In this document: in pieces, positions 1,271-61,577 of the stretch | How the letters are laid out: the number at the start of each line of letters is the position of its first letter | Numbering within the stretch: the first letter of the stretch is position 1 | DNA from: Rhodosorus marinus CCMP1338 | Lineage: Eukaryota; Plantae; Rhodophyta | Direction of reading: 5' to 3' | Assembly: GCA_029953675.1 (NCBI GenBank) | Contig: JAMWBK010000007.1 | Span: forward strand, 2,108,001-2,172,000 | Length of the DNA: 64,000 bases | Notes under the pieces: generated by a model | Databases searched by the model: none | What the model saw: only the letters and a program-made list of their open reading frames with translations | What the model was told of the DNA's origin: nothing | Position numbers and translations under genes: made by a program

Positions 1271-2069
1271 ACCGCTTACAACGAAGACCTTCGGCAACAG
1301 CTCAATGCTTAAAAAAAAATCACCACTCTCGATATCCCACACAAAAAAACAATCAACAACAGAAGCTTATTTTCTAATTTTTAAGTCCCCACCCAAATTT
1401 ATTTGTGTCAATATTTAAAATTTACCTCAAATTTCAACTCTCAAGCAATTTACGTGTACAAATGAAAAATTCTTCTTCAGAATATTTTGATTGATTATTG
1501 ATTGAACTGCGGGTGACTAGCCACTAATTTCAGAGCTTTTCGAAGGCTCTTTGCACTTCCAAAGAATTTCCCGTAAAACTAAAGAAATTGCACGCGCAAG
1601 CGTAGAAATCTATTTATATATGAAAACTTTGCTATTCCTTACTAAATCCAGTATTGTAAAAGTTTTTTTGATAACTGTTTTTCACGGCTAGAATCAAGTA
1701 CATTGAAATATTTACCTAAATTCAAGAAATGAGATGTATGGTCGTCTTGAGACAACCAAGAGGTGATTGGCTAATTTTATTGCAACTTTGCTGGATCGAC
1801 AAGTAATTGGTCATATTATTGTTGAAAAATGTTAAATTGGCAACGGAGTGTTGATCGAGTTGGGGATGTTATCTTAATTGCTAAATGGGATCGATTGGGA
1901 TGGTTGGCAAAGGGTATAAATGCAGAGTTGTTTGAGGAGGATTGATATTGACGGTCTGGAGTGGTCGAAGAGTCAGGTATTGTGAGTGTTGGGAAGGAGG
2001 CAGAGGATCGTTCAGATTTTTGGGGTGAGGTATTGTTTTTTTTTGGGGGGGGGGGGGCTGAGAGGAAGA

Positions 2070-3077
2070 ATGAAAGCGTGGAAGATTACTGAGTTTGGAT
2101 CGGTCGATGTGATGAATCTTGTGGATGACTTTCCCATCCCCGAGATGAAGTCCACCGATATTTTGGTGAAGAACAAGGCCGTTGGGTCGAATCCGATTGA
2201 TTACAAGGCGAGGGGTGGTGCAACAGTTGTACCGTCCGAGGATAATCCTAGAATTGTTGGATGGGACGCAGCAGGAGTGGTTGAGCAAATTGGCAGTGAC
2301 GTCGTCGGGTTCAATGTGGGTGACGAAGTATACTACGCAGGGGATATTATGCGTCCACTTGGATCGTACGCAGAGTTCACAGCGGTAGACTATCGCATTG
2401 TCGGAAAGAAACCAAAGTCGCTGAGCTGGGCCGAGGCCTCGACTATTGCTTTGGTGGCGATTACGGCCTGGGAGACGATGAAGGAGGATATGGTCGTCGA
2501 AGAAGGCTCAGAAATGTTGATCATCAATGGTGCGGGGGGTCTCGGCTGCATGGCAATCCAGCTTGCAAAGCAGCTGGGTTTGACAGTCATTGCCACTGCA
2601 AGTCGCCAAGAGACCGTGGAATGGTGCAAGAAAATGGGCGCGGATCACGTAATCACGCACAGGGAACCACTAGCACCACAGTTGGAGAAACTCGGGTATG
2701 CGAAAGGGGTCAGATATGTTTTTCACTGCCACGAAGTGGGCAATGAGCTGGGTGAGCTGATGAAAAACGTGGTGGGTCCCCTTGGGAAGCTATCCTTGAC
2801 ATTTTCTCCAAAGGATGAAGGTGCCTTCGGCACAATTGACACGGTTGACATGTGGTTCAACCGGAAGGCTCTTCTCAGTACTATGATGTTCGCAAGGCCG
2901 TTTACAGGAGTCAATCCTGAGAAGCAGGGAGAGCTCCTCGACACCGTCGCTGACATGATTGATGCCGGAAAGATCACACCTGTCGTGACCAAAACGATGA
3001 AGTTCGAGGAAGCAAAAGAAGTAATGGAGCTCCAAGCATCGGGATCGACAATCGGCAAAATTGCGATGACGCTTTAG
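2070..3077 (+). CDS. Zinc-free MDR / quinone oxidoreductase-like protein (TIGR02817-type), paralog 2, 335 aa, intronless
   Basis: ATG at 2070 (MKAWKITEFG). Motifs KAVGSNPIDYK, VGWDAAGVV, VGDEVYYAGDIMRP.GSYAEF..VDYRIVGKKPKSLSWAEA, GAGGLG, TASR, MFARP. Asn replaces the catalytic Zn-binding Cys. Confidence 0.92.
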   Translation: MKAWKITEFGSVDVMNLVDDFPIPEMKSTDILVKNKAVGSNPIDYKARGGATVVPSEDNPRIVGWDAAGVVEQIGSDVVGFNVGDEVYYAGDIMRPLGSYAEFTAVDYRIVGKKPKSLSWAEASTIALVAITAWETMKEDMVVEEGSEMLIINGAGGLGCMAIQLAKQLGLTVIATASRQETVEWCKKMGADHVITHREPLAPQLEKLGYAKGVRYVFHCHEVGNELGELMKNVVGPLGKLSLTFSPKDEGAFGTIDTVDMWFNRKALLSTMMFARPFTGVNPEKQGELLDTVADMIDAGKITPVVTKTMKFEEAKEVMELQASGSTIGKIAMTL

Positions 3078-13000: not shown

Positions 13001-14090
13001 TCTTCTTGAGCTTTGAGCAGCAATCATTCTTAATCCAATAAATCAATATGATCTGGAAAAAATAAGCACGAATGTCGTAAATTTTGCTGGTATCCCGGAT
13101 AACATGCCCTTAATACACCATACCACTGATTGGATGAACGCTTACATCAAAATTCCGCGCCAGTAGATTTTGTCCAATCGTAGCATGGGAACCCTTGTGA
13201 TGTCCACTGATGGCTCAGGGCCGTTGCTGCCGGGCCACCGGCTAGGATAGTACATAGTAGCATGGTCGACCGAATGTACAACCAACCCCATCAAAGCGCG
13301 GAGTTGTTTGACAAGCCGCATCCAGTGGGGTTCTCAGTTACAGAACTGGACGACAAAAACCAATTCTGCTGTGACACAATTGCAGTTCTTTAGTTAGACA
13401 AGTCTTCAGTCATAGGACAACTGCTTTTTTCAGATCTAGAACTCATCTGAGGGCCTGGGTTGGTCCACTTCCAGGTCACCAACGGCAGACTCTCCTTCAA
13501 GCTGAGAAAGCTGAGCGCGTGTAAACAACGGGAGCGAGGATGTTCGTAGAAGATTGGCGCTTGAAAGGGGCAACAAGCACGCGGGAGGATCTTTAGGGCT
13601 CGTATTGCCGTAACTGTGGACAGACCTTCTTGCACGGCCCTCGATCGCGTCCACGGGCGAAGACTGCTGAACCACAATTTTTGTATCGACACCGTCCCTG
13701 AATCTAAGAGCGCGTCAAACGCCATCAACCCGCCAGGAGGATGGGGCCCAAGCGATCCTAAAGCGGACTGTAGTTGGTCTAGCTTTGCACCCTAGTTCGA
13801 TCCGGTCAGGGTCAACTAGTTTTCCTGCTGCAGACCGGCCTGCAGCCCAGCCCTGCCGGTTCGTTTGTCCTAGCTCTTGCTTCCTCAATTGCTAGTATTT
13901 GGCTAGACAGCTTAAGATCGGCATGACCTTTGGCGTCTATTTAGTCCTAAGCAAAGACCTACAAACTCATCCCATTGACCGGTTCTTCACGAGGACGTAC
14001 ATACGCACTCTGGCACGTGTCACGAGGTTAGTGAGGGCTACTTCTACGAGTTTGATCTCGCGCGCAGAACGTAGAGTAGACTAGGCCCAC
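13000..14090 (-). mobile_element. Degenerate Ty3/Gypsy-like gag-protease(-RT) remnant
   Basis: Minus strand: gag-like KLVEVALTNLVTRARVRMYVLVKN../WDEFV; a gag/pol-like junction GCAGGAAAACTAG (..QQEN* overlapping AGKLVDPDRI in the -1 frame); aspartic-protease-like AFDALLDSG; weak RT-like VLIFSRS near 13050. Many stops and frameshifts. Confidence 0.5.
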
Positions 14091-14157
14091 GAACTCGAGA
14101 TTGAGGTTGCCCGAAGCCACCCATTTGTGTTTCTGAGGAGCGGCTTGGTATAGAAAC

Positions 14158-14936
14158 ATGCCTCCGAAGGTGAAGAAATCGCATATCAAGGAGATCTTGA
14201 GATTGGCAGAATCTAAACATGTCAGGCTGCCTACAGATGAAGCTGGACGACTTGTAGCTGCGGCCAGGTACTATAAAGAACTGGTATGGAATTCCACGCT
14301 AATCGTTAATGCGCCTCAACTGCGTCCTGAGCTTATTGAATTGATCCATGCGATCGACTAGGGCGACAAGGAGAAAGCTGCAGATGCACTGCTGAAGCAG
14401 TTTGGGGTCAAGAAGGATTTCGTCAAGGACGAGCAGGAGCTCGCAAGAGATAAACTCCAAAAGGAGGAGGCGGAGCTGGAGGATGAGAAAGAGGACGCAG
14501 ATGGTGACCAAGAACAACCGAAGAAAAAGCGAGCAAAGCAGGAACCGGCGGCAGCCCATGTGACTGTAGAGAAGAATCGGCCTCTTACAGAATTGTTTCG
14601 CGAACTGGCAAAGTATGAGTTCGAAGAGGAAAATAGACAGAAAGGATTCGCGTATCAAAAGGTTGGATATGAAATCTGTGACCAAGGAGGAGCGCTGTAG
14701 TGCCTGGTGCCTTCTAAGGCATTGAAGGTCAAAAACCCAACCTAAGCAAGTCCCTCTTTGTATCTGACGTATGGCAGGTGGGTACCGCAATCGCGGAATG
14801 CGACTTTGAAGTAACCAGCGGAAAGGAGGCAATGACTCTGAAAGGTGTCGGTAAATCGAGCGGGAGCAAGATCGACGAGTATCTCACAACCGGCAAGATA
14901 GCGAAAATCGAAGAGGCGAGAAGAAGTCGTGAATAA
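14158..14936 (+). CDS. Stand-alone DNA polymerase beta N-terminal (8-kDa, HhH / dRP-lyase-like) domain protein, 194 aa, 3 exons (14158-14283, 14362-14661, 14778-14936)
   Basis: C-terminal 80 aa NRPLTELFRELAKYEFEEENRQKGFAYQKVGTAIAECDFEVTSGKEAMTLKGVGKSSGSKIDEYLTTGKIAKIEEARRSRE* align without gaps in the core to the Pol beta residue ~12-90 region. NLS-like PKKKRAK. Stop codon follows directly, so no polymerase domain. Confidence 0.82.
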
Positions 14937-15332
14937 GAGTTTACCACTACCAGCGGCTTCCTAAATCGATGCTGCGAGTCTGAAAGAGGTTCTAACGAAG
15001 CCCTGTAGGAACAATTGCGAAGACGCTTTACAAACCGAGCACCCCTCCGGGCAACAGGCAACCCCTCCGTTGGCCCCACGTGAGGTAGTCCGAAACAAAG
15101 CATTGTAAACGGGCCCGCTTGGACGTCGTCGAACCACAAGGAGGATATATTATCATCTCGGGTTTCGGGGCGTCATGAGGAGCATATCGTAGATACTGGT
15201 TCGCTCACACGGACCAGATTTAATGTACAGGGCACCATGCGAAGAAGCAAGTTAACTTTCCTATTTCCTCATGGGGTCGTATTCGACACCAGGTATGCGT
15301 TCGACTTTTGTGAAGTTGAGTACAAGCGTTGT

Positions 15333-18300
15333 TCATCCCTTCTTCTTTCTTCCTCGTCCCCTAACGCCGCCTCGACTGGATGCCGTAGAGCCGCCTCTCT
15401 TCTTTCCAGAGGCTTTTCCGGCCTTGACCATCTTGTCTCCTTTCAAGGTGTCGTCCTCCACTTCCTCTTCCGCATCTTGCTCCTCCTCATCCCCTTTCTC
15501 TACGATGACTTCATCGCCAGCCTCCACAACTTCTTTTGGAGCCGACCGTCCTGATTTCTTCATCTGGCGCACGAGAAAAGATGGTAACCTTTTAAGAACT
15601 TGCACGTGAACGTTGGAAGCCGAGTGTGCCTGGTAGCGCGGCGAATATCGGATGCATACCTGTGTCAACGACACGGTGGAGCTGACGTGATCACCGGACT
15701 GATAAGTTCGAGTGAAGGCGGACTTCACGGCGCTTGGAATACTGTCCTTCGGGTTTGACCTCTGCTGGACGGAGGTTAAATCCAATATTGTCTCCCAGTC
15801 CACATTTGAGAGGTAGTACCTGCGCAAGAACCAAGCGCAAACGAAGGTTCCAAAGCGTTTCATCCTTAATATCAGAAAACGTGAATATTGCATAGCCCTG
15901 TTGGTTCTCTGGTTATTAACTGACTCGTCTAGGAGGTCAATCACAGTTGGTACACCTTCCTTCCCATTCCGGATCAAGGGCAGGCTTAGGTGTGAACGAA
16001 GGCACGGTGCATAGTCAAGAAGCAAAAGCTTCCAGTCCGCGTTAACCCTGGTTTTGATGTGCATGTCAATCTCCTGAGCAAGTCTCACGGATTTTCTCTC
16101 AGACGACATTTTCCCAAGCCATGACGGAAAATTGGGTCTCCCCATTAGATGGGACTGAACAGTCGAGAACAAGCATGCGGGCAATCGTGTGAGAAATAGT
16201 CATCCTCGTTGAACATACTACAGTATGACTGCTGCGTCATGGCGTCGTTGTCCTTACGGCTAGAATGGAACCGGGGTAGACGCTGCTGAGCAATGCAATG
16301 GTCGGCATCAGGTCCCATCGGCTTGATTCCCTCAACTAAACGAGTAAACCGTGCAGGAACACAGAGGGCGTCAACAGCGGCAGGAAGAATGAACATGTGA
16401 ACTGCAGCCGGCTCGTTTGAAAACTGGCTTACCTGTTTATTCCCGATGTCGGCCATGGACATGAGGTCCGTCGCTTTCGCGAGCTTGTCAATGTCTTCCG
16501 ATGCGCTGAAGTGGACGTAGTTCTCTTGCACCATCAGTGGTACGAGGTCTGGATCCATGAAGTACTTGTCTAGCCTCTGGTAGATGTCAGCATTCTTCTG
16601 CCCGGGGTTTTTCGAAAGGAGCAAAGAGTTGATAAGCACAGGTGAAGCTCTTCAACGGTGTTTGTCAATAACCTAATTGAAGGACACCAGAGGCCTGGTC
16701 ATGCACACCTCGAAGAAGACTTTGAACAGATCAAAAATGGGCTGTTGCTGAAAGCTCTTGCCCTCAGATGACAAATAGTCCCTCGCTTCCGCCTGCGAAA
16801 CGCTCAGCTTTCGCGCCTGCCAACTCTGTTGTTGTGAAAAGGGGTTTCGGACAATGTCGAATCAGAGAACGCGGAGGACGAGACCGGCAACGATTACACA
16901 ACAAGCTCTGCGCTTACCTGCAACATGTTGACCATTTGACGAATATCTCCGTGGCATGCCTCGGCTACTTCATCTAATACTTCGGAGGATATATTTCTAA
17001 ATCCCTCCTGGTCGCAAATATACTTAAGGCGTCTCCTCACTTGGGATACCATTGGTCGTCGAAACTTGAGCTTGAAACAATGGTTGGCGAGAGATCGAAC
17101 CTGTCATTGCCGTACCCAAAATCTATCAGACTCCACTAGAACGGGTATCGAGAAAGCGCTGGCCAAGGTTCTGACCAATTTTCCCTACCTTCGGGTGGCC
17201 ATCATCATTGGCTATACAAATGATTGGAATTTTGGTGCTCTTGATTATACTGATGAGCTCTTGTACACCTCCACGATCTCCAGCAGACATGCCATCCACC
17301 TCGTCCATAATAACCACCTGCAAGTTGTTCGCAGGACATGATCAGACAATTCGGGGCGCCCGGCTGGCTTGAGCGCGTACACTTGCGGAAGAAACAAGGA
17401 GCTCACCTGACCATCTTTTCTGGGTGCTTTTGGAGAATCGTCTAAGCGAAGGTACTGTCCGATTGCTTCGTTCACCGCGAGTGATCCGATAATAGAAGCC
17501 ACAGACTTCTTGCTCCTCGTGTCGCTCGCGTTGAATTCCTGCGCTTCCATACCTACCTCTTTGCATGCCTGAGCAAGAGGACGAATCGTTTAAGACTCTT
17601 ACTGTGTTCGGGGATCCGAGCAACGCTAAACTCGAGATCATGGAAAATGATAACAAGCGACTCACCGCATATGCGAGCGAAGTTTTTCCTACTCCGGGGG
17701 GGCCTGCCAGCAGTACAGCCTAGCCACATCAACCAAGACAAGAAAGGTTTGGTTTGAGATCGATCATGTGCATGCTCGTCCGCATGGTCTCCGACCGATG
17801 AAAGCTTGTCAAAAAGTGCTCTTTGATCACTTCTTCCGGAGCGTGGGTCCGGAGAAACTTGGAGGTTTTTGCCACGCACCTTCTCCTGTCCTGGTGGCAA
17901 TTTCCCTTTCTTCGGACCGCTGTGCAAATGAATTGAGCGCCAGTTTCTCAGCCACTTGACGAGGTCCGAAGCATGCTTCGGGTTTGCGCAAAGATCAGAT
18001 ATCGTCTCCGGTTTGTACTTGTCTACCCACAGAGCCTCTGCCGATGGTACAAACGGCTGCAGACAATGACAAATGAAAACAGCCGGGATAAGTGGGAGGT
18101 ACGGGTCCTCAGAGAATCAGAGCGTGTCTCCCGATCTGTACCTCTCTCTTTATCGTTGGGAACGGTTCTCCATATTTAACCGGTTGCTGCTTCGCTTTCG
18201 AAACCTTCGAAGGAATGCTAGACGGCGCTTGTGCTGCGCGCCCTTTCCTCCTTCGTTTAATCTCGGTGACCTCTACTTCGTCAGAGTCAGAGCTGTCATC

Positions 18301-25709: not shown

Positions 25710-27147
25710 ATGAGGGAAATTATTTCACTCCACATCGGACAGGCTGGAGTTCAGGTTGCCAACTCCTGCTGGGAGCTGTTTTGTCTTGGTAAGCCCACTA
25801 CGAGTGGATCGAATATCAAATACGAGGAGCTTCTTCTAAGCGCGGAGCTGTGTTTGTTTCTTCCGTTTTCGGTCTCTTTTAGAGCACGGCATTACCCCTG
25901 ATGGTACCCTCAAGGAAGGAGCCAATCCGAATGATACTGCTTTCTCCACCTTTTTCTCTGAGACTGGAAGCGGAAAGTACGTCCCCCGTGCTCTGTTCCT
26001 TGATCTCGAGCCCACCGTCATCGACGAAGTGCGCAGTGGAGCATACAAGAAGCTTTACAACCCCTCCCAGTTGATCTCTGGCAAGGAAGACGCTGCAAAC
26101 AACTACGCTCGTGGACATTACACAGTTGGCAAGGAGATCGTTGACGTCGCTCTTGATAGAATCAGGAAGCTTACGGATAACTGTGACGGACTTCAGGGAT
26201 TCCTTGTGTTCAACTCGGTCGGTGGTGGAACCGGGTCTGGCCTTGGGTCTCTTCTCCTCGAGCGTCTATCCGTGGACTTCGGGAAGAAGTCGAAGCTTGC
26301 GTTTACGGTATACCCATCTCCACAAGTGTCGACGGCAGTTGTAGAGCCTTACAACTCGGTGTTATCCACTCATGCGCTTCTCGAGCATACTGATATCGCG
26401 GTCATGCTTGACAATGAAGCTATTTACGACATTGCGCGCCGTTCTTTGGACATTGAACGCCCGACATACCAGAACTTGAACAGGCTGATCGCTCAAGTTA
26501 TTTCGTCTATTACGTCGTCGCTACGATTCGACGGGGCGTTGAACGTGGACATCAACGAGTTCCAGACCAATTTGGTCCCTTACCCGAGAATCCACTTCAT
26601 GCTTTCTTCGTACGCACCTGTGATTTCTTGCGAGCGTGCACATCATGAGCAGATGTCAGTTTCTGAGATTACTACTAGTGCCTTTGAGCCGTCCTCAATG
26701 ATGGCCAAATGTGACCCGCGCCACGGCAAGTACATGGCATGCTGTCTTATGTACCGAGGTGACGTTGTTCCGAACGATGTTAATGCGGCAGTAACCTCGA
26801 TCAAGAACAAGAGGACTATTCAATTTGTTGACTGGTGTCCGACTGGATTCAAGTGTGGCATCAACGGACAGGCCCCGACCTCTGTTCCTGGAACGGATAT
26901 GGCTGACGTGAAGCGCGCAGTTTGTATGATCGCGAACTCGACGGCAATCGCTGAGGTATTCTCACGTATTGATCACAAGTTTGACCTCATGTACGCCAAA
27001 CGTGCATTTGTTCACTGGTACGTTGGAGAGGGAATGGAAGAGGGTGAATTCACCGAAGCCCGAGAGGATCTTGCTGCCCTTGAGAAGGACTACGAAGAAG
27101 TCGGTAACGACGCTGGAGATGGTGAGGACGATGAGGAGGCATTTTAA
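25710..27147 (+). CDS. TUA: Alpha-tubulin (intron 25789-25882)
   Basis: [26 protein letters not shown]|EHGITPDG...; [14 protein letters not shown]; GGGTGSG; [20 protein letters not shown]; acidic tail ending DDEEAF*. Confidence 0.99.
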
Positions 27148-31329: not shown

Positions 31330-31722
31330 ATGGAGCTAAGCAGGGAAGATCGGACTATGGAGGTGGATTCAGGGGAGTATTTATTGGATTATGGAAGCAT
31401 GGAGACGTCGTCCACTTCGCTAGAGAGAACTCGGAGGAGGAGGAGAAAAAGCGGGTCCCTCCTGGGTGTGAACAGGCCAATCACAAAATCGGACTTCAAC
31501 GCACCACAGCTTTGCGTGAACCGCAAAGTTGGCGGGATGAGGAGAAATTGGTCTTTTCTCAGTCTTTCGGGTGGTGACGATATTTCAAGGATGGATAGCC
31601 TAAGTCTTTCCGGGACTTCGAGCTCAACATGGAAGAAGACGATGAGCCCTCGTAGCGAGCGCTCGTTCGACTCGTTTTCGCAGGATCTTTCCGACGAGGA
31701 GCTCAGAGCGCTCAAGGATTAG
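31330..31722 (+). CDS. Hypothetical Ser/Arg-rich protein, 130 aa, probably disordered
   Basis: ATG-initiated ORF after a GT-rich leader. Basic cluster RTRRRRRKS and kinase-site-like MRRNWSF. No domain recognised; may be part of a larger spliced gene. Confidence 0.4.
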   Translation: MELSREDRTMEVDSGEYLLDYGSMETSSTSLERTRRRRRKSGSLLGVNRPITKSDFNAPQLCVNRKVGGMRRNWSFLSLSGGDDISRMDSLSLSGTSSSTWKKTMSPRSERSFDSFSQDLSDEELRALKD

Positions 31723-32560
31723 ACCGGTCTCATTTGCTCTTGTGGGGCGAAAGAGGAGGGAATTCGGGGACAAACAGGGATGTAATAATCTCCCAGTTGA
31801 CACCCTGTGACGAGGTGAAGCTCGGACGGAGCGAGACCCGACACTCGTTACTGTTCTCGTTACGTTTCAATTTTGTATGCAAAGGGATTTTCATGTCGAG
31901 CATAGCTCAAGGGATGATGGGAACTGTGCTTGAGGAGACGGTGTTGGTGCCACCCCGTGATTTGTGAGTGTGTATTGTTTGATCATGCTGATCATGGCGA
32001 GCCTGAAGGCCGTTTCGGCGTACTGCGGAGTCAAGAAGGCTGAACTGATGCTTTGGCTCTTCATGCGACGGATAGTTGAGATATGAGACCAGACATCCTA
32101 CTCGCGAGGCGCTTGCTCTGGGCCGAAACTCCCGATTGACTATCACTTGATGAGGAACTCACTTAGCGCTGGCGATAGGTATCTTAGGCACTTGCGATCT
32201 GTGATTTTTTTGTACTATATGGTTTAAAGGTAAATCAAAGGAATTAGTTTTTCTCTCAAACCGCTGGACATTGGTGCATGACTTTTGCCTGTCTTCGTCC
32301 CCTTCGTCCAATGCTCGGACAGGACTGAGTGTTAGCGCAGTTGACCAACTACATCACAGCTGTATGGGACTTAGGTGGTCTAATTCCCGCGAGCGGACGT
32401 TCTGCTGTGTTTTTGCTAAAGACATGGCTCAAGCAAAAGCTACTAGTAACGAAGTACTTTTGGAGTGCACGCGGCCAAAGCGCTCTTGTACGTTGGCAGG
32501 TTCACCACTAGCCTATTCGACAAGACCGAACAATGTGTATACGCCGCCCCGCGGAATCCC

Positions 32561-44612: not shown

Positions 44613-46074
44613 ATGACCCCCCGTACTGGAAAGCGAGCATGGAACCGGGAGAGACTAAGGCGCATGAATAAGCCGCCGATAAGGGTAGTGGTTGTGCTTT
44701 TCGCCATTTGCGTAATAGCTTATCGAACTCTGTGAGTAGCTGCGTTTTTCTGCTTCTGTTGGGGGGCCCTCGCGTATTGCTGACTGGTTCCGAGGCTTTT
44801 TTTCTTTTGGGGGCCTTAGCTGGTCGACAGGCACCATGATCACTTCATTTTATGAAGCGTCAGACCCGAGCAACACTTCCCATTTAGGAACCGAAGCGGA
44901 AGAATTCAAAGGGATAAACTTGGCAGACCACAAAGCGGACTACGAGGACTATCAGCACGAGCACAAAACTCCCCAGTCCCCTCACGAAGGCGGTTACGGG
45001 TACAACATGGAGACACTTGTTGACGAGGATGATGAATACTATGACGAGAACGATGAAGACGATGATATCGATCGGGACCCTTACTACGATGAGCAAGGTG
45101 AAGAAGGCGAAGAAGAAGAAGACGAAGATGATACTGCAGCTGAGGAAGATGATGCGGATGCGGTGGACTCGGGATACTACGGTGATTCGCAGGACAAAGA
45201 GGAGGCTGAGGGAGGTGACAAATATGGGGAGTACGACGGCGAGTCTGAGAACGTACAAACGGGACTGGATATTGAGGTGTCAAATGACGGGGCCGCTGGT
45301 GATTTCGCTGTTGCCAGCGTGAATGATTCTGCCGGGCACGAAGACGGACACGATGAGTCTTATGGTGAACACGAGGACGAAGAGTCTTATGGTGAAGCCG
45401 AGGACAAGGAGTCTTATGGTGAAGACGAGGACGATGAGTCAGAAGATAATGCAGGCATCGGGGATGGTGAGGATGGCTTGGAAGGAGACGAAGGGGATGG
45501 AGACGAAGGGGAAGAATATGAAGGTGAAGAAGATGAAGTTGAAGAAGATGAAGGGGAAGCAGATGAAGGCGGAGAAGATAGAGGGGAAGAAGATGAAGGG
45601 GAAGAAGATGAAGGGGAAGAAGATGAAGGGGAAGAAGATGAAGGGGAACAAGATGAAGGGGAAGAAGATGAAGGGGAACAAGATGAAGGGGAAGAAGATG
45701 AAGGGGAAGAAGAGGAAGGGGAACAAGATGAAGGGGAACAAGATGAAGGGGAAGAAGATGAAGGGGAACAAGATGAAGGGGAACAAGATGAAGGGAACGA
45801 AGATCAAGGGGAAGACGACAATATCGATTCTGCGGAAGATGGTTATGCAGTAGACAAAGATGAACCTCCAGTCGACGTTGTAGCGGCCGGCCATCAAAAG
45901 CAGGAAGCTGATGCGGGCATGGGTGCAAACGCTATGGGAGCCAATACCGAAGCTGTGGAAGTCGAAAGTGAGGGTGGTATTGTGGATGGTGGGCTAGTCC
46001 CCAGCTACGATGCAGGAAGAAACACAGGAAACACAGCGTTTACTTCAACGGACGTGCATGCAGGCGTGGTCTAA
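44613..46074 (+). CDS. Highly acidic type II membrane protein with EEDEG/EQDEG pentapeptide repeats, about 457 aa (intron 44732-44819; 3' end could include one more exon)
   Basis: Basic N-terminal tail MTPRTGKRAWNRERLRRMNKPP, then TM segment IRVVVVLFAICVIAY. Splicing GTGAGT...CCTTAG joins in frame to the 412-aa acidic ORF (RTL|WSTGTMITSF). Confidence 0.7.
45355..45435 (+). repeat. 27-bp coding tandem repeat x3 (ESYGE[HAD]ED[EKD])
   Basis: gagtcttatggtgaaNNNgaggacNNN occurs three times. Confidence 0.9.
45586..45810 (+). repeat. 15-bp coding minisatellite x15 (GAA[G/C]AAGATGAAGGG = E[E/Q]DEG)
   Basis: Units counted by hand. Degenerate units precede it from about 45490. Confidence 0.97.
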
Positions 46075-59100: not shown

Positions 59101-60024
59101 TTTAAGCCTGCCCTGGTCATTAATATTACACTCCGAAATAAACCAAATTAAAGATCCGAGTGACGGGCGCACCCCACAGCTGAATATTGACACCGTAACT
59201 GACATCGATTAAACCAATTCATTCAACTAGACGAACGCACTTGCCTTGACACCTATTGTGGGCCAATCAATTTTGGGGTCACTTAGAATGGGAATCAAAT
59301 TTTAAAGCGAAATATTTGCCAATTTTTACATGCCGAACTAGCCAATGATATGCAGTCGGAGAAATAGTATCCTTTCAGCCAAAAAGCAGGTAAAACAGGT
59401 GGACAGACCCCCCTGGCAGCAGAGGTTGTTTTTCTCTTCTTGTCGATGAGAAAAAGCACGTTCGATAATGTGGTCAAGATGGCCTTCTCCCAAAGCAAAG
59501 TTTCCCCGTTTGTGCTGATCTGAGTGTTAATTGCCACCACCTCGGCGGCAACGTGAACGGCATCCTTCCTCTTGTGCCCCTCCAGGACTAAACCCCAGCC
59601 TAACGAAGCTTTTTGCGTTGGAGACGGAGTGCGCGTTTTGGGGCTGAGGCTTGATTGCTTATGTAGTTTCTTGTGGATAGGTGAGTGAGCAATTGAGCGA
59701 AGGGTGTTCAATTTCTTTTTTTTTTGGAAGGCCTTGGATGTTTCTACGATGATCAAGTACAGGGGCTGGTGAGCAAGTCGCGTTCTTCTTGTTTCCTGTT
59801 AAATGGGATGGGTGAATGAAACGCGAAATGACAGTTGGGCTGGGGAGGTGGGGGACCTAGGTGTGAATGGAGCGCAGTGAGGATCAAAGTGTCGTGGTGT
59901 GATATCCGTTTGCTAGGAGGTAGGTGGCTTGGTTTTGAAAACGGTGAGATGCGCTTAGGGGTAGCGACTGCTAGTGCTAGGTAGCAGCCTTTGCCTTCGA
60001 GCAGGGTCGGAAAAAAAGTTGAGT

Positions 60025-61577
60025 ATGGAGATTGGGAAAGGGGGAGGTTCCTCCGTGAATATCAATGCATCCTGGCTGTTTTTGAGCTTGATGTATTTGG
60101 TTCAAGGGATTCCGCTTGGCCTGGCCGCAGGGAGTGTTTCATATTTGTTGAAGAGCTCTATGACATACTCCGAGGTCGCAATTTTCTCTTTTGCAACTTG
60201 GCCATATGCGTTGAAGCTTTTTTGGAGTCCAGTGGTTGATGGGTTCTACTGGTCCAAACTGGGAAGGAGGCGCAGTTGGATTCTGCCGGTGCAGATACTT
60301 ATAGGTCTCACAATGATTTATATTTCGCAATGGATAGATTGCTACTTGCCTGGCGAAGAGTGCTCGACACAAGGTCCTCGTCCTGAGGCACCTGGTATCC
60401 GGTTCATTACCTTTTGGTTCTTCATTTTGGTGCTTCTTAGCGCAACTCAGGATATCGCTTTGGACGGGTGGGCACTAGAGTTGTTGCCCGAGAGTGACAG
60501 GCACCTCGCATCAAGTGCACAAACGATGGGGCTTACTGGTGGTTTCTTTCTGTCCTTTACGGTACTGCTCTCACTATCTTCTAGAGCTTTTGTACGCGAA
60601 TGGCTCCCTTTTCTAGAGGGTCCGCCCATAACTATCTCCGGTTACATTCGATACGCCGGCATTGCTGCAGCAACTATGAGCGTTTTCGTGCTTCTCGTGC
60701 CTGAGTATCCGCCAACGGAAGAACTGGATGTCATGGACGTGTACAGGAAGCTTGTCTCGGTCGTTATCTCTCGGCGGGATTTGCTGCTTGTTCTTCTTGT
60801 ACATAAGTTGGGATTTGTTGCGAACGATGCTGCATCAAGCTTGCTATTGCTGGAGAGAGGCTTTAGAAGAGAGGACTTCGCGCTGACAGCAATGTTGGAC
60901 TTCCCCGTACAGCTTGTTGTCGGGCTTATAGTGACACGCTGGTCAAAGAAGCGGAACCCAGTCCAACCGTGGGTTACTGGACAACTTATGCGACTTGCTC
61001 TGTGCTTTATCATGAACGTATTTATTTATTATGCAGTTGGAAGAACCTCCGGGCTGGAAGCTTTCTTTCCGTTGGTGGTCTCCTTGTCCATTCTTACAAG
61101 CGTAGCTGGCACAGTCATGTTCATATCTCAAGGGGCATTTTTCGCTGTAATATCTGATTCAGCGATAGGCGGCAGTTATCAAACGCTGCTCAACACGGTA
61201 AGCGAGAGCAGAAATGACCCACCGGATATGGCCTGGTTTGAATGGAATCAGCGCCTTGGTTATAGCTCTACTTGTTTGACCCTTGTTTTGCTGATGCGAA
61301 TATCATTGCTTCGTTTCTTTTCGTTCATGGCTGGCAGTTTTCGAACTTTGGTGGGACCTGGCCGAAGTTCTTTGTCCTCCGGGCCATTGATTACTTTAAC
61401 GTTGAGGTTTGCGACAGTATGAGCAACTGCGTGCGTACTCGGGAGGGTTATGTTCCCGTCTCGTTTGCGACTGTGTCCCTTGGTGCTTTATTGTTCGCTT
61501 TTTTGGTGAGGCCAAGAATTCAGGATCTCGTGCAGAGCAACAGGAATAGCGCCGTCGCGAAAGACAAGATGTCATAG
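60025..61577 (+). CDS. SLC33A1: Acetyl-CoA transporter 1 (SLC33A1/AT-1, MFS); intron 61198-61337
   Basis: LMYLVQGIPLGLA.GSV..LL; FSFATWPYALKLFWSPVVD; LGRRRSWILPVQ; LSATQDIALDGWAL; ASSAQTMGLTGGFF; AIGGSYQTLLNT|FSNFGGTWP. Confidence 0.95.

What the first reader, a model, noticed from the sequence alone, without database searches (positions are those of the whole stretch)
14158..14936. Polymerase-less Pol-beta 8-kDa domain protein: candidate stand-alone dRP lyase / gap sensor
Seen: a 194-aa spliced gene whose last ~80 aa match the Pol beta N-terminal domain and then stop. Residues equivalent to human Pol beta K35, Y39, K41, the HhH GVG (64-66) and the Schiff-base nucleophile K72 (SGSKIDE) are kept; K68 is Ser. 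The N-terminal part is a helical segment plus an acidic linker and NLS. Known: this domain removes 5'-dRP and binds 5'-phosphate at gaps in base-excision repair, normally fused to an X-family polymerase; a related HhH also occurs in MUS81. Inference: a split base-excision-repair system with the lyase encoded separately. Similar small proteins may already exist unannotated in other algae or stramenopiles.
Basis: partly seen in the sequence, partly recalled or inferred. Interest (0 to 1): 0.72.

Follow-up and report, generated by a model that had tools for sequence, protein, structure and literature searches.

The report
Polymerase-less Pol beta lyase-domain protein
A red alga (Rhodosorus marinus) has a real, expressed and conserved 194-residue gene that carries only the small DNA-end-binding "lyase" domain of DNA polymerase beta, without the polymerase. 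It belongs to a widespread uncharacterised protist family whose larger relatives attach the same module to DNA-break-sensing zinc fingers.

Summary
Exons 14158-14283, 14362-14661 and 14778-14936 (+, GT-AG introns) encode 194 aa. Residues 113-182 match Pfam HHH_8 (E=1.4e-15) and human Pol beta residues 12-90 (E=2e-9). The predicted domain superposes on Pol beta at 0.9 A. Pol beta E26, K35, Y39, K41, the GVG hairpin and K72 are kept. K68 is Ser, next to a Lys.

The protein is NCBI "hypothetical protein NDN08_004817" of Rhodosorus marinus. A cDNA-like contig from a related strain has intron 2 spliced out, stops at the same codon and runs straight into a convergent RFC1 gene. No polymerase exon follows. 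dN/dS is 0.07.

It is not an orphan. Over 500 relatives exist, in oomycetes, chrysophytes, a xanthophyte, a green alga and giant viruses. Most are short and end just after the domain. A new 60-aa N-terminal three-helix domain plus HHH_8 forms a cassette, which longer relatives join to zf-PARP, SAP and PADR1.

Best reading: a nuclear protein that binds nicks, gaps or 5'-phosphates in strand-break repair, possibly with dRP/AP lyase activity. Roughly half of the short-form relatives replace E26/Y39/K72 together with Y/F/Y, so lyase is not the family-wide function. The "split BER" idea could not be tested.

The parts
14158..14283 (+). Exon 1 (aa 1-42): start codon and the first two helices of the N-terminal domain, including the conserved V-R-L-P-T motif
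   Evidence: Splice model. In-frame stops lie just upstream of the ATG. The exon is conserved in the related strain and in orthologues.
14284..14361 (+). Intron 1 (GT..AG, 78 nt). It carries an in-frame TAG at its 3' end.
   Evidence: It is retained in the cDNA-like contigs L001 and L002. Orthologue P0004 aligns across the junction without it, so splicing is required to make the conserved N-domain.
14362..14661 (+). Exon 2 (aa 43-142): third helix of the N-domain with the 'QFGV' motif, the acidic linker, the NLS-like motif and the first half of HHH_8
14425..14517 (+). Acidic, predicted-disordered linker (aa 64-94)
   Evidence: pLDDT is 36-53 over aa 60-100 in the AF2 model built from the alignment. 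Length and sequence vary among orthologues.
14518..14538 (+). PKKKRAK, a basic motif resembling a classical nuclear localisation signal (aa 95-101)
   Evidence: Read from the sequence. A K/R-rich patch sits at the same place in nearly all short-form relatives. Its NLS function is inferred.
14572..14661 (+). HHH_8 / Pol beta 8-kDa-like domain, first part (aa 113-142). It holds E128 (= E26), K136 (= K35; codon 14641-14643), Y140 (= Y39; codon 14653-14655) and K142 (= K41).
14662..14777 (+). Intron 2 (GT..AG, 116 nt), which splits the HHH_8 domain
   Evidence: It is absent from the cDNA-like contigs L001 and L002 of a related strain, which is direct transcript evidence of splicing.
14778..14936 (+). 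Exon 3 (aa 143-194 plus stop): helix-hairpin-helix G165-V-G167, K168, S169 (= K68), K173 (= K72; codon 14868-14870), the terminal helix 'KIAKIEEARRSRE' and the TAA stop
   Evidence: The stop position is conserved in the related strain, and the family as a whole ends just after the domain.

Best explanation
The locus is a real, expressed, three-exon nuclear gene of the red alga Rhodosorus marinus. It encodes a 194-aa two-domain protein:
- a previously undescribed three-helix N-terminal domain of about 55 aa;
- an acidic disordered linker with an NLS-like motif;
No polymerase is attached.

It is the minimal form of a conserved [N-domain + HHH_8] cassette. Other protists fuse this cassette behind PARP-type zinc fingers, SAP and PADR1 modules.

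Most likely mechanism (inferred). After nuclear import, the HHH_8 domain docks on DNA nicks or gaps, as it does in Pol beta. Docking would use the helix-hairpin-helix (G165-V-G167) and the basic pocket (K136, K142, K168, K173). The N-domain would recruit or position a partner.

Rhodosorus keeps the Pol beta lyase-pocket residues E128, K136, Y140 and K173 intact. It is therefore a plausible 5'-dRP/AP lyase acting through a K173 Schiff base, that is, a 5'-end-cleaning factor in base-excision or single-strand-break repair.

Graded belief:
- real gene with a Pol beta-like 8-kDa domain and no polymerase: about 0.97;
- binds DNA through this domain: about 0.85;
- acts in strand-break or base-excision repair: about 0.55;
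- shows dRP/AP lyase activity in vitro: about 0.5;
- lyase is its main physiological role: about 0.3.
For: Shown:
- The gene model, start and stop are established.
- Intron 2 is spliced out, and the sequence is collinear through the stop codon, in cDNA-like contigs of a related strain.
- Selection is purifying: dN/dS is 0.07 overall, and the HHH_8 domain has 13 synonymous and 0 non-synonymous differences.
- HHH_8 matches with E=1.4e-15 and Pol beta with E=2e-9.
- The AF2 model built from 30 sequences has pLDDT 93-95 over the domain.
- Foldseek places that domain on Pol beta at rmsd 0.9 A over about 78 columns, 39-40% identity, probability 1.0.
- The family profile ranks Pol beta (5e-20) above Thermus PolX (5e-15) and Pol lambda (7e-14).
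- E26, K35, Y39, K41, GxG and K72 are kept. PMC2241857 names K72, Y39 and K35 as critical for dRP lyase and lists E26 in the catalytic pocket.

Family context:
- 516 relatives have E<=1e-3, and the best 150 are mostly short proteins with the domain at the C-terminus.
- An N-domain HMM finds the same domain directly upstream of HHH_8 in proteins that start with zf-PARP, SAP and PADR1. This ties the cassette to DNA-break recognition.
- The zf-PARP forms keep K72 in 12 of 13 cases.
- The triad state E26/Y39/K72 occurs in 79 domain copies, against a concerted Y/F/Y state in 27. These residues therefore behave as one unit, and Rhodosorus has the Pol beta state.

Established knowledge (my own, not tested here): the isolated 8-kDa domain of Pol beta retains dRP lyase and DNA binding. 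zf-PARP is also joined to other end-processing enzymes, such as DNA ligase III and plant ZDP.
Against: - No biochemical data exist for any family member.
- Three of the seven Pol beta pocket residues differ (S30->E, H34->Q, K68->S), and K60 is Met.
- Only 30 of 69 short-form relatives keep Lys at the K72 position, and 28 have Tyr. DNA-binding positions are kept in 63-68 of 69 (K35, K41, G64, G66, Lys at position 67). Lyase therefore cannot be the conserved function of the family.
[quoted passage not shown] Keeping it does not distinguish binding from catalysis.
- The same domain is also fused to TFIIS-N/Med26 and GIY-YIG, and is arrayed in tandem in giant viruses. That fits a general DNA-binding module.
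- The N-domain matches no known family, so the partner is unknown.
- Gene neighbourhood gives no support: RFC1 adjacency is not seen in Phytophthora ramorum.
Confidence: 0.5

Rival explanations
1. It is a non-catalytic DNA- or chromatin-binding protein. The HHH_8 domain would be a general DNA-backbone-binding module, and the N-domain would mediate oligomerisation or tethering. There would be no enzymatic role and no specific link to base-excision repair.
For: - About half of the short-form relatives lack the Lys72 equivalent but keep the DNA-contact residues.
- The domain occurs in tandem arrays of 2-4 copies in giant-virus contigs and in Aphanomyces H310_10902.
- It is fused to a TFIIS-N/Med26 domain in another subgroup.
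- An acidic plus basic low-complexity linker is common in chromatin proteins (my own knowledge).
Against: - The Rhodosorus and oomycete clade keeps the whole E26/Y39 (or W)/K72 unit.
- The HHH_8 domain has no amino-acid change between the two strains despite 13 synonymous changes.
- The cassette is fused repeatedly to DNA-break sensors (zf-PARP, PADR1), not to histone-like or chromatin-reader domains.
Confidence: 0.27
2. It is an adaptor for a structure-specific nuclease, working like the N-terminal HhH domain of MUS81. The HHH_8 domain would bind flap or junction DNA, and the N-domain would bind a nuclease or scaffold.
For: - Pfam HHH_8 also covers the MUS81 N-terminal domain, and UniRef auto-names these proteins 'MUS81-like HHH domain-containing'.
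- One relative joins a GIY-YIG nuclease domain to HHH_8 (P0095).
- P0065 carries two repeats that, by eye only, resemble the SLX4 C-terminal motif. Pfam did not confirm this.
Against: - The domain is far closer to Pol beta, PolX and Pol lambda than to any other solved structure, and MUS81 is not among the best 60 PDB matches to the family profile.
- The protein has no nuclease domain, and none lies downstream on the same strand.
- The Pol beta lyase-pocket residues are kept.
Confidence: 0.1
3. It is an annotation or assembly artefact, or a decaying remnant of a family X polymerase gene that lost its catalytic exons.
For: - The domain normally sits at the N-terminus of a polymerase.
- Intron 1 is retained in the two available cDNA-like contigs.
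Against: - dN/dS is 0.07 between strains, with identical stop positions.
- Transcript evidence exists.
- Full-length orthologues with the same two-domain layout occur in oomycetes and chrysophytes, and in other relatives from unnamed sources.
- A convergent RFC1 gene starts about 400 nt downstream.
- The window has no PolX-like sequence.
Confidence: 0.02

Closest known systems
8-kDa N-terminal (dRP lyase) domain of DNA polymerase beta (family X; Pfam HHH_8, PF14716)
   Same: - 39-40% sequence identity.
- Predicted fold superposes at 0.9 A.
- The helix-hairpin-helix GVG is kept, as are E26, K35, Y39, K41, K72 and L22.
- It is the best PDB match for both the single sequence and the family profile.
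   Different: - No fingers, palm or thumb follows, and the domain lies at the C-terminus of the protein instead of the N-terminus.
- S30, H34, K60 and K68 are not kept.
- It is preceded by an unrelated N-domain and an acidic linker.
- Lyase activity is untested.
[quoted passage not shown]
   Same: It is the same domain family. The 'G-I/V-G-K' hairpin, with Lys directly after the second Gly, matches the family consensus seen here. That Pol lambda also has this Lys is from my memory.
   Different: The match is weaker than to Pol beta: 7e-14 and 5e-15 against 5e-20 for the family profile. Both are again parts of polymerases.
N-terminal HhH domain of MUS81
   Same: It is covered by the same Pfam family. 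This is the source of the automatic UniRef name.
   Different: It is not among the best 60 PDB matches. MUS81 carries an ERCC4 nuclease, which is absent here.
zf-PARP-containing DNA-end-processing proteins (PARP1 N-terminal region, DNA ligase III, plant ZDP)
   Same: Longer relatives of this protein begin with zf-PARP, SAP and PADR1, the PARP1-type break-sensing modules. By analogy, a break sensor is coupled to an end-processing or end-binding module.
   Different: The Rhodosorus protein itself has no zinc finger. The long forms carry [N-domain + HHH_8] where PARP1 has BRCT-WGR-catalytic. My searches found no paper describing this architecture.
Short viral 'DNA polymerase family X, N-terminal domain' proteins and giant-virus tandem HHH_8 proteins
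   Same: They are polymerase-less proteins built from the same domain.
   Different: They have no N-domain cassette. Many carry 2-4 tandem copies behind a coiled coil. They are only distantly similar in sequence.

Membership tests
Pfam HHH_8 / Pol beta-type 8-kDa domain | Significant match to the family profile, above the curated threshold | tested here: met
   57.8 bits against a cut-off of 30, E=1.4e-15, profile positions 2-72 of 73.
Pfam HHH_8 / Pol beta-type 8-kDa domain | Compact helical fold with a helix-hairpin-helix that superposes on the solved Pol beta domain | tested here: met
   The AF2 model has pLDDT 93-95 over aa 110-190. Foldseek gives rmsd 0.9 A over about 78 columns, probability 1.0. 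This is a prediction, not an experimental structure.
Pfam HHH_8 / Pol beta-type 8-kDa domain | Hairpin G-phi-G plus basic DNA-contact residues (K35, K41, K68/K72 region) | tested here: met
   G165-V-G167, K136, K142, K168 and K173 are present. K68 itself is Ser and K60 is Met.
dRP lyase (Pol beta / Pol lambda type) | Schiff-base nucleophile Lys72 with Tyr39, Lys35 and Glu26 in the pocket | tested here: met
   K173, Y140, K136 and E128 align to these positions. Their roles are taken from PMC2241857. Three other pocket residues differ (S30, H34, K68).
dRP lyase (Pol beta / Pol lambda type) | Measured 5'-dRP removal and a NaBH4-trappable covalent intermediate | not testable with these tools
   This needs recombinant protein and a dRP substrate.
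Family X DNA polymerase | Fingers, palm and thumb nucleotidyltransferase core following the 8-kDa domain | tested here: not met
   - The protein stops 12 residues after the Pfam match.
- The transcript contig is collinear through the stop.
- tblastn with seven PolX proteins finds only the 8-kDa region in the 64 kb.
- The 'GSFRRG' hit at 31683-31724 is a chance match.
MUS81 endonuclease | ERCC4 nuclease domain C-terminal to the HhH domain | tested here: not met
   Pfam finds no ERCC4 match. MUS81 is absent from the best PDB matches.
[N-domain + HHH_8] cassette family (defined here) | A three-helix N-domain of about 60 aa with the '[VI][RK][LFV]P[TK]' and 'FG' motifs, located upstream of a C-terminal HHH_8 that ends in an 'LEExR'-type helix | tested here: met
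   - The N-domain HMM hits aa 3-58 with E=8e-13. P0001 was in the seed alignment, so this is partly circular.
- The same HMM hits the equivalent position in zf-PARP proteins that were not in the seed.
- Full-length 49% identity to P0004.

The most novel reading that the evidence does not exclude
The [N-domain + HHH_8] cassette marks an unrecognised and widely distributed eukaryotic strand-break repair factor: a polymerase-independent 5'-dRP/AP lyase. It would act alone in Rhodosorus and oomycetes. In green algae and other protists it would be fused behind zf-PARP/SAP/PADR1, giving a 'nick sensor plus 5'-end cleaner', the counterpart of the plant 3'-end cleaner ZDP. It would supply the lyase step of short-patch base-excision repair in lineages where no polymerase provides it. 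The Y/F/Y subfamily would be a natural catalytically dead, binding-only offshoot.
Probability: 0.25. Interest if true: 0.75.

Novelty: new variant of a known kind. Interest (0 to 1): 0.55.

Why it matters
In the best-studied systems, removal of the 5'-deoxyribose phosphate is reported to set the overall rate of base-excision repair (PMC2241857). There it is carried out by a domain attached to DNA polymerase beta or lambda.

A conserved, polymerase-free version of that domain would show that this step, or at least recognition of 5'-phosphorylated nicks and gaps, can be supplied by a separate protein. The evidence is that it is widespread in algae, oomycetes and giant viruses and is repeatedly fused to PARP-type break sensors.

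The finding has three practical uses:
- It defines a testable candidate repair factor for lineages whose BER pathway is poorly known.
- It offers a natural active-site-variant subfamily (E/Y/K against Y/F/Y) that can separate binding from catalysis.
- It adds a new 60-residue domain of unknown fold family, which probably mediates partner binding.

Tried and rejected
1. I searched the 5.8-billion-protein set with a profile of PolX catalytic cores. Of 8000 candidates scored, 5415 matched at E<=1e-10. The 120 listed that carry an organism name are all animal Pol beta or lambda, and the unnamed rest come from metagenome or run assemblies. No red-algal or oomycete entry was visible. The result is inconclusive, not negative.

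2. Single-sequence AlphaFold gave a poor model (pLDDT 54). It was replaced by the model built from the alignment.

3. Identity of the N-domain.
- Pfam scans of 21 members found no recurrent hit.
- A profile against PDB sequences gave nothing better than E=0.16.
- hhalign against the HHH_8 profile gave probability 0.1%, so it is not a degenerate second copy.
- A fold search of the N-domain alone was impossible. Models cannot be cropped, and the Pol beta domain dominates the hit list.

4. Literature. Searches for stand-alone 8-kDa domains, HHH_8/PF14716, zf-PARP+PADR1+HhH, and Pol lambda in red algae found nothing relevant. PDB entry 6h5h, 'polb4', occurs in the searched library only in one NMR-methods preprint, which I did not read. 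I did not establish what it is and set it aside.

5. Conserved gene neighbourhood. RFC1 adjacency is shared only with the close strain, not with Phytophthora ramorum.

6. A weak tblastn hit of the PolX 'GSxRRG' motif at 31683-31724 is a chance match. It lies in a non-coding-looking stretch and has no DxD motif.

7. DEK-C or SAP identity for the N-domain, considered by eye because of the 'FGV' motif, was not supported by Pfam.

Full report
**1. What is in the sequence**

Reading 13500-16000 and the six-frame ORF list shows three open segments on the + strand. They join through canonical GT-AG introns in only one frame-preserving way: exons 14158-14283, 14362-14661 and 14778-14936. The product has 194 aa.

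In-frame stop codons lie immediately upstream of the ATG. The protein is identical to NCBI 'hypothetical protein NDN08_004817 [Rhodosorus marinus]', a stylonematophycean red alga. UniRef names it automatically from its Pfam domain.

**2.

Pfam HHH_8 (PF14716) matches aa 113-182 with E=1.4e-15 and 57.8 bits, against a cut-off of 30. No other significant domain is found. phmmer against all PDB sequences gives human Pol beta residues 12-90 at E=2e-9, and Pol lambda at about 1e-3 to 1e-4.

- K35 = K136, Y39 = Y140, K41 = K142
- G64-V-G66 = G165-V-G167
- K68 = S169
- K72 = K173

In addition, E26 = E128 and L22 are kept, and a Lys (K168) directly follows the hairpin. S30, H34 and K60 are not kept.

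A Pol beta paper names K72, Y39 and K35 as the critical lyase residues. It lists E26, S30, H34, K35, Y39, K68 and K72 as the catalytic pocket (PMC2241857). Four of the seven pocket residues are therefore kept, including all three called critical.

**3. The gene is real, expressed and complete**

A 4.4-kb JGI contig (L001, with a near-duplicate L002) comes from a strain about 87-90% identical in DNA. It carries the same gene with intron 2 precisely removed. An intron of the neighbouring gene is also removed, so the contig is cDNA-derived. Intron 1 is retained in these contigs.

The contig is collinear with the genome from exon 3 through the stop codon and into a convergent gene on the minus strand. 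That gene matches RFC1 (Pfam RFC1 C-terminal domain, E=1.6e-29).

tblastn with seven family X polymerases finds only the 8-kDa region in the whole 64-kb window. One weak motif hit at 31683-31724 is a chance match.

Between the two strains dN/dS is 0.07. Within the HHH_8 domain there are 13 synonymous and no non-synonymous differences. Splicing of intron 1 is supported by orthologue P0004 (196 aa, 49% identity over residues 3-194), which aligns across the junction.

**4. Structure**

With a 30-sequence alignment, AlphaFold2 gives three regions:
- a confident three-helix N-domain (aa 7-56, pLDDT 85-90);
- a disordered acidic linker (aa 60-105, pLDDT below 55);
- a very confident C-terminal domain (aa 110-193, pLDDT 93-95).

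Foldseek places the C-terminal domain on the Pol beta 8-kDa domain at 0.9 A rmsd over about 78 columns, with 39-40% identity. A profile of the family's domain ranks Pol beta (5e-20) above Thermus PolX (5e-15) and Pol lambda (7e-14). MUS81 is not among the best 60 matches.

**5. It belongs to a large, unnamed family**

An exhaustive phmmer search of 1.84 billion representatives finds 516 relatives at E<=1e-3 and 77 at E<=1e-10. Nearly all of the best 150 are proteins of 100-350 aa with the domain at the extreme C-terminus, ending in an 'LEE[YL]R.G'-type helix. True PolX proteins rank far lower.

Named members are all 'hypothetical protein'. They come from:
- oomycetes: Pythium, Aphanomyces, Thraustotheca, Phytophthora, Peronospora;
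- chrysophytes: Chromulina, Chlorochromonas;
- the xanthophyte Tribonema;
- the green alga Pyramimonas;
- several transcriptome and metagenome sources without a taxon name.

An HMM of the N-domain finds it in the short forms. It also finds it immediately upstream of HHH_8 in longer proteins. [N-domain + HHH_8] is therefore a conserved cassette.

Architectures confirmed by Pfam:
- zf-PARP + cassette;
- zf-PARP + SAP + PADR1 + cassette (for example Pyramimonas P0132);
- HHH_8 + SAP + PADR1;
- TFIIS-N/Med26 + HHH_8;
- GIY-YIG + HHH_8;
- 2-4 tandem HHH_8 copies.

The tandem forms occur on IMG/VR contigs, including giant-virus MAGs. Short polymerase-less 'PolX N-terminal domain' proteins also exist in viruses.

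The N-domain matches nothing in Pfam or among PDB sequences, and it is unrelated to HHH_8.

**6. What the conservation pattern says about mechanism**

Among 69 short-form proteins, the DNA-contact positions are nearly invariant:
- K35 in 63
- K41 in 64
- G64 in 67
- G66 in 68
- Lys after the hairpin in 64

The K72 position is different. It is Lys in only 30 and Tyr in 28.

The changes are concerted. The triad at positions 26/39/72 is E/Y/K in 79 domain copies (plus E/W/K in 10), and Y/F/Y in 27. The lyase-pocket residues therefore behave as one functional unit. That unit is either kept whole, as in Rhodosorus, the oomycetes and 12 of 13 zf-PARP forms, or replaced whole, as in the chrysophyte-type proteins.

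From this I infer two things. DNA-end, nick or gap binding is the common function of the family. Lyase chemistry is plausible only in the E/Y/K lineage, to which this gene belongs. K72 is also listed among the Pol beta residues important for DNA binding (PMC2241857), so its retention alone does not prove catalysis.

**7. Most likely function**

The protein is most likely a small nuclear protein that docks on nicks, gaps or 5'-phosphorylated ends through its Pol beta-like domain, and brings a partner through its N-domain. It would act in single-strand-break or base-excision repair, and in this lineage it may remove 5'-dRP or cut AP sites through a K173 Schiff base.

The link to break repair rests on the repeated fusion of the cassette to PARP-type break sensors. 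This is an inference from domain architecture, and the lyase step is untested.

Rivals, in order of weight:
- a purely architectural DNA or chromatin binder, supported by the Y/F/Y subfamily, the tandem arrays and the TFIIS-N fusions;
- a MUS81-like nuclease adaptor, supported only weakly;
- an artefact or decayed polymerase gene, effectively excluded.

**8. Comparison with what is known, and novelty**

The C-terminal domain is a member of the Pol beta-type 8-kDa domain family (HHH_8). The protein is not a family X polymerase and not MUS81, because their defining catalytic domains were tested for and are absent.

The new elements are at the level of architecture:
- a polymerase-less, C-terminally placed lyase-type domain;
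- its pairing with a new N-domain;
- the fusion of this cassette with zf-PARP, SAP and PADR1.

My limited literature searches found no description of it. The proteins are, however, already in public databases with an automatic domain-based name. I therefore rate it a new variant of a known kind, of moderate interest.

**9. What remains open**

Whether Rhodosorus or the other carriers have a family X polymerase could not be determined here. The 'split BER system' idea is therefore untested. No activity, localisation or partner data exist.

Noticed in passing
window 15333-17721 (minus strand): An RFC1-like gene (replication factor C large subunit; Pfam RFC1 C-terminal domain, E=1.6e-29) converges on the HHH_8 gene, with only about 400 nt between the stop codons. 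In the related strain both genes are assembled into one cDNA-like contig, which suggests overlapping 3' ends.
   Followed up: partly
L001:475-554 and window 14284-14361: Intron 1 is retained in both cDNA-like contigs (L001, L002) although intron 2 is removed. Retention would truncate the protein at 67 aa through the TAG at the intron's end. This could be regulated intron retention or just an unspliced precursor.
   Followed up: partly
relatives P0022, P0035, P0077, P0170, P0180 and others (not in the window): Concerted triple substitution in one subfamily: E26->Y, Y39->F, K72->Y at the Pol beta lyase-pocket positions (27 domain copies, against 79 with E/Y/K). This is a natural active-site swap and could serve as a binding-only control.
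   Followed up: yes
relatives P0032, P0066, P0072 (not in the window): Their zf-PARP domains score above the Pfam threshold. By eye, however, they lack part of the zinc ligands ('CKKSK' instead of CxxC, and no His/Cys at the second site in P0066). They may be zinc-free PARP-finger-like domains.
   Followed up: no
L003-L011 (IMG/VR contigs, including GVMAG-S-1102104-120 and GVMAG-M-3300001718-3): Proteins with an N-terminal coiled coil and 2-4 tandem Pol beta-like 8-kDa domains are encoded on viral contigs, including giant-virus MAGs. Their function is unknown.
   Followed up: partly
Aphanomyces invadans locus tags H310_10902 and H310_10904 (not in the window): A three-copy HHH_8 protein (322 aa) and the short N-domain + HHH_8 protein (219 aa) carry locus tags two apart on the same 925-kb contig. 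This suggests a local duplication or cluster.
   Followed up: no
window 44836-46074 (+), repeat 45480-45815: A 412-aa extremely acidic low-complexity ORF contains 22 copies of a 15-bp unit (GEEDE repeats). It accounts for the strong GC and AT skew at 44-46 kb. Pfam finds no match.
   Followed up: partly
window 1986-3077, 26029-27147, 59974-61422 (+): Other recognisable genes or exons in the window are a zinc-type alcohol dehydrogenase, a tubulin, and an acetyl-CoA transporter (Acatn). These are ordinary nuclear genes, consistent with a eukaryotic chromosome.
   Followed up: partly
P0003 (Logan assembly of a related strain): A 108-aa gene call ends in the same 53 residues as this protein, but an unrelated N-terminal part precedes them. 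That part appears to read through intron 2 in another frame. This looks like a prokaryote-style gene-calling artefact on eukaryotic DNA.
   Followed up: no
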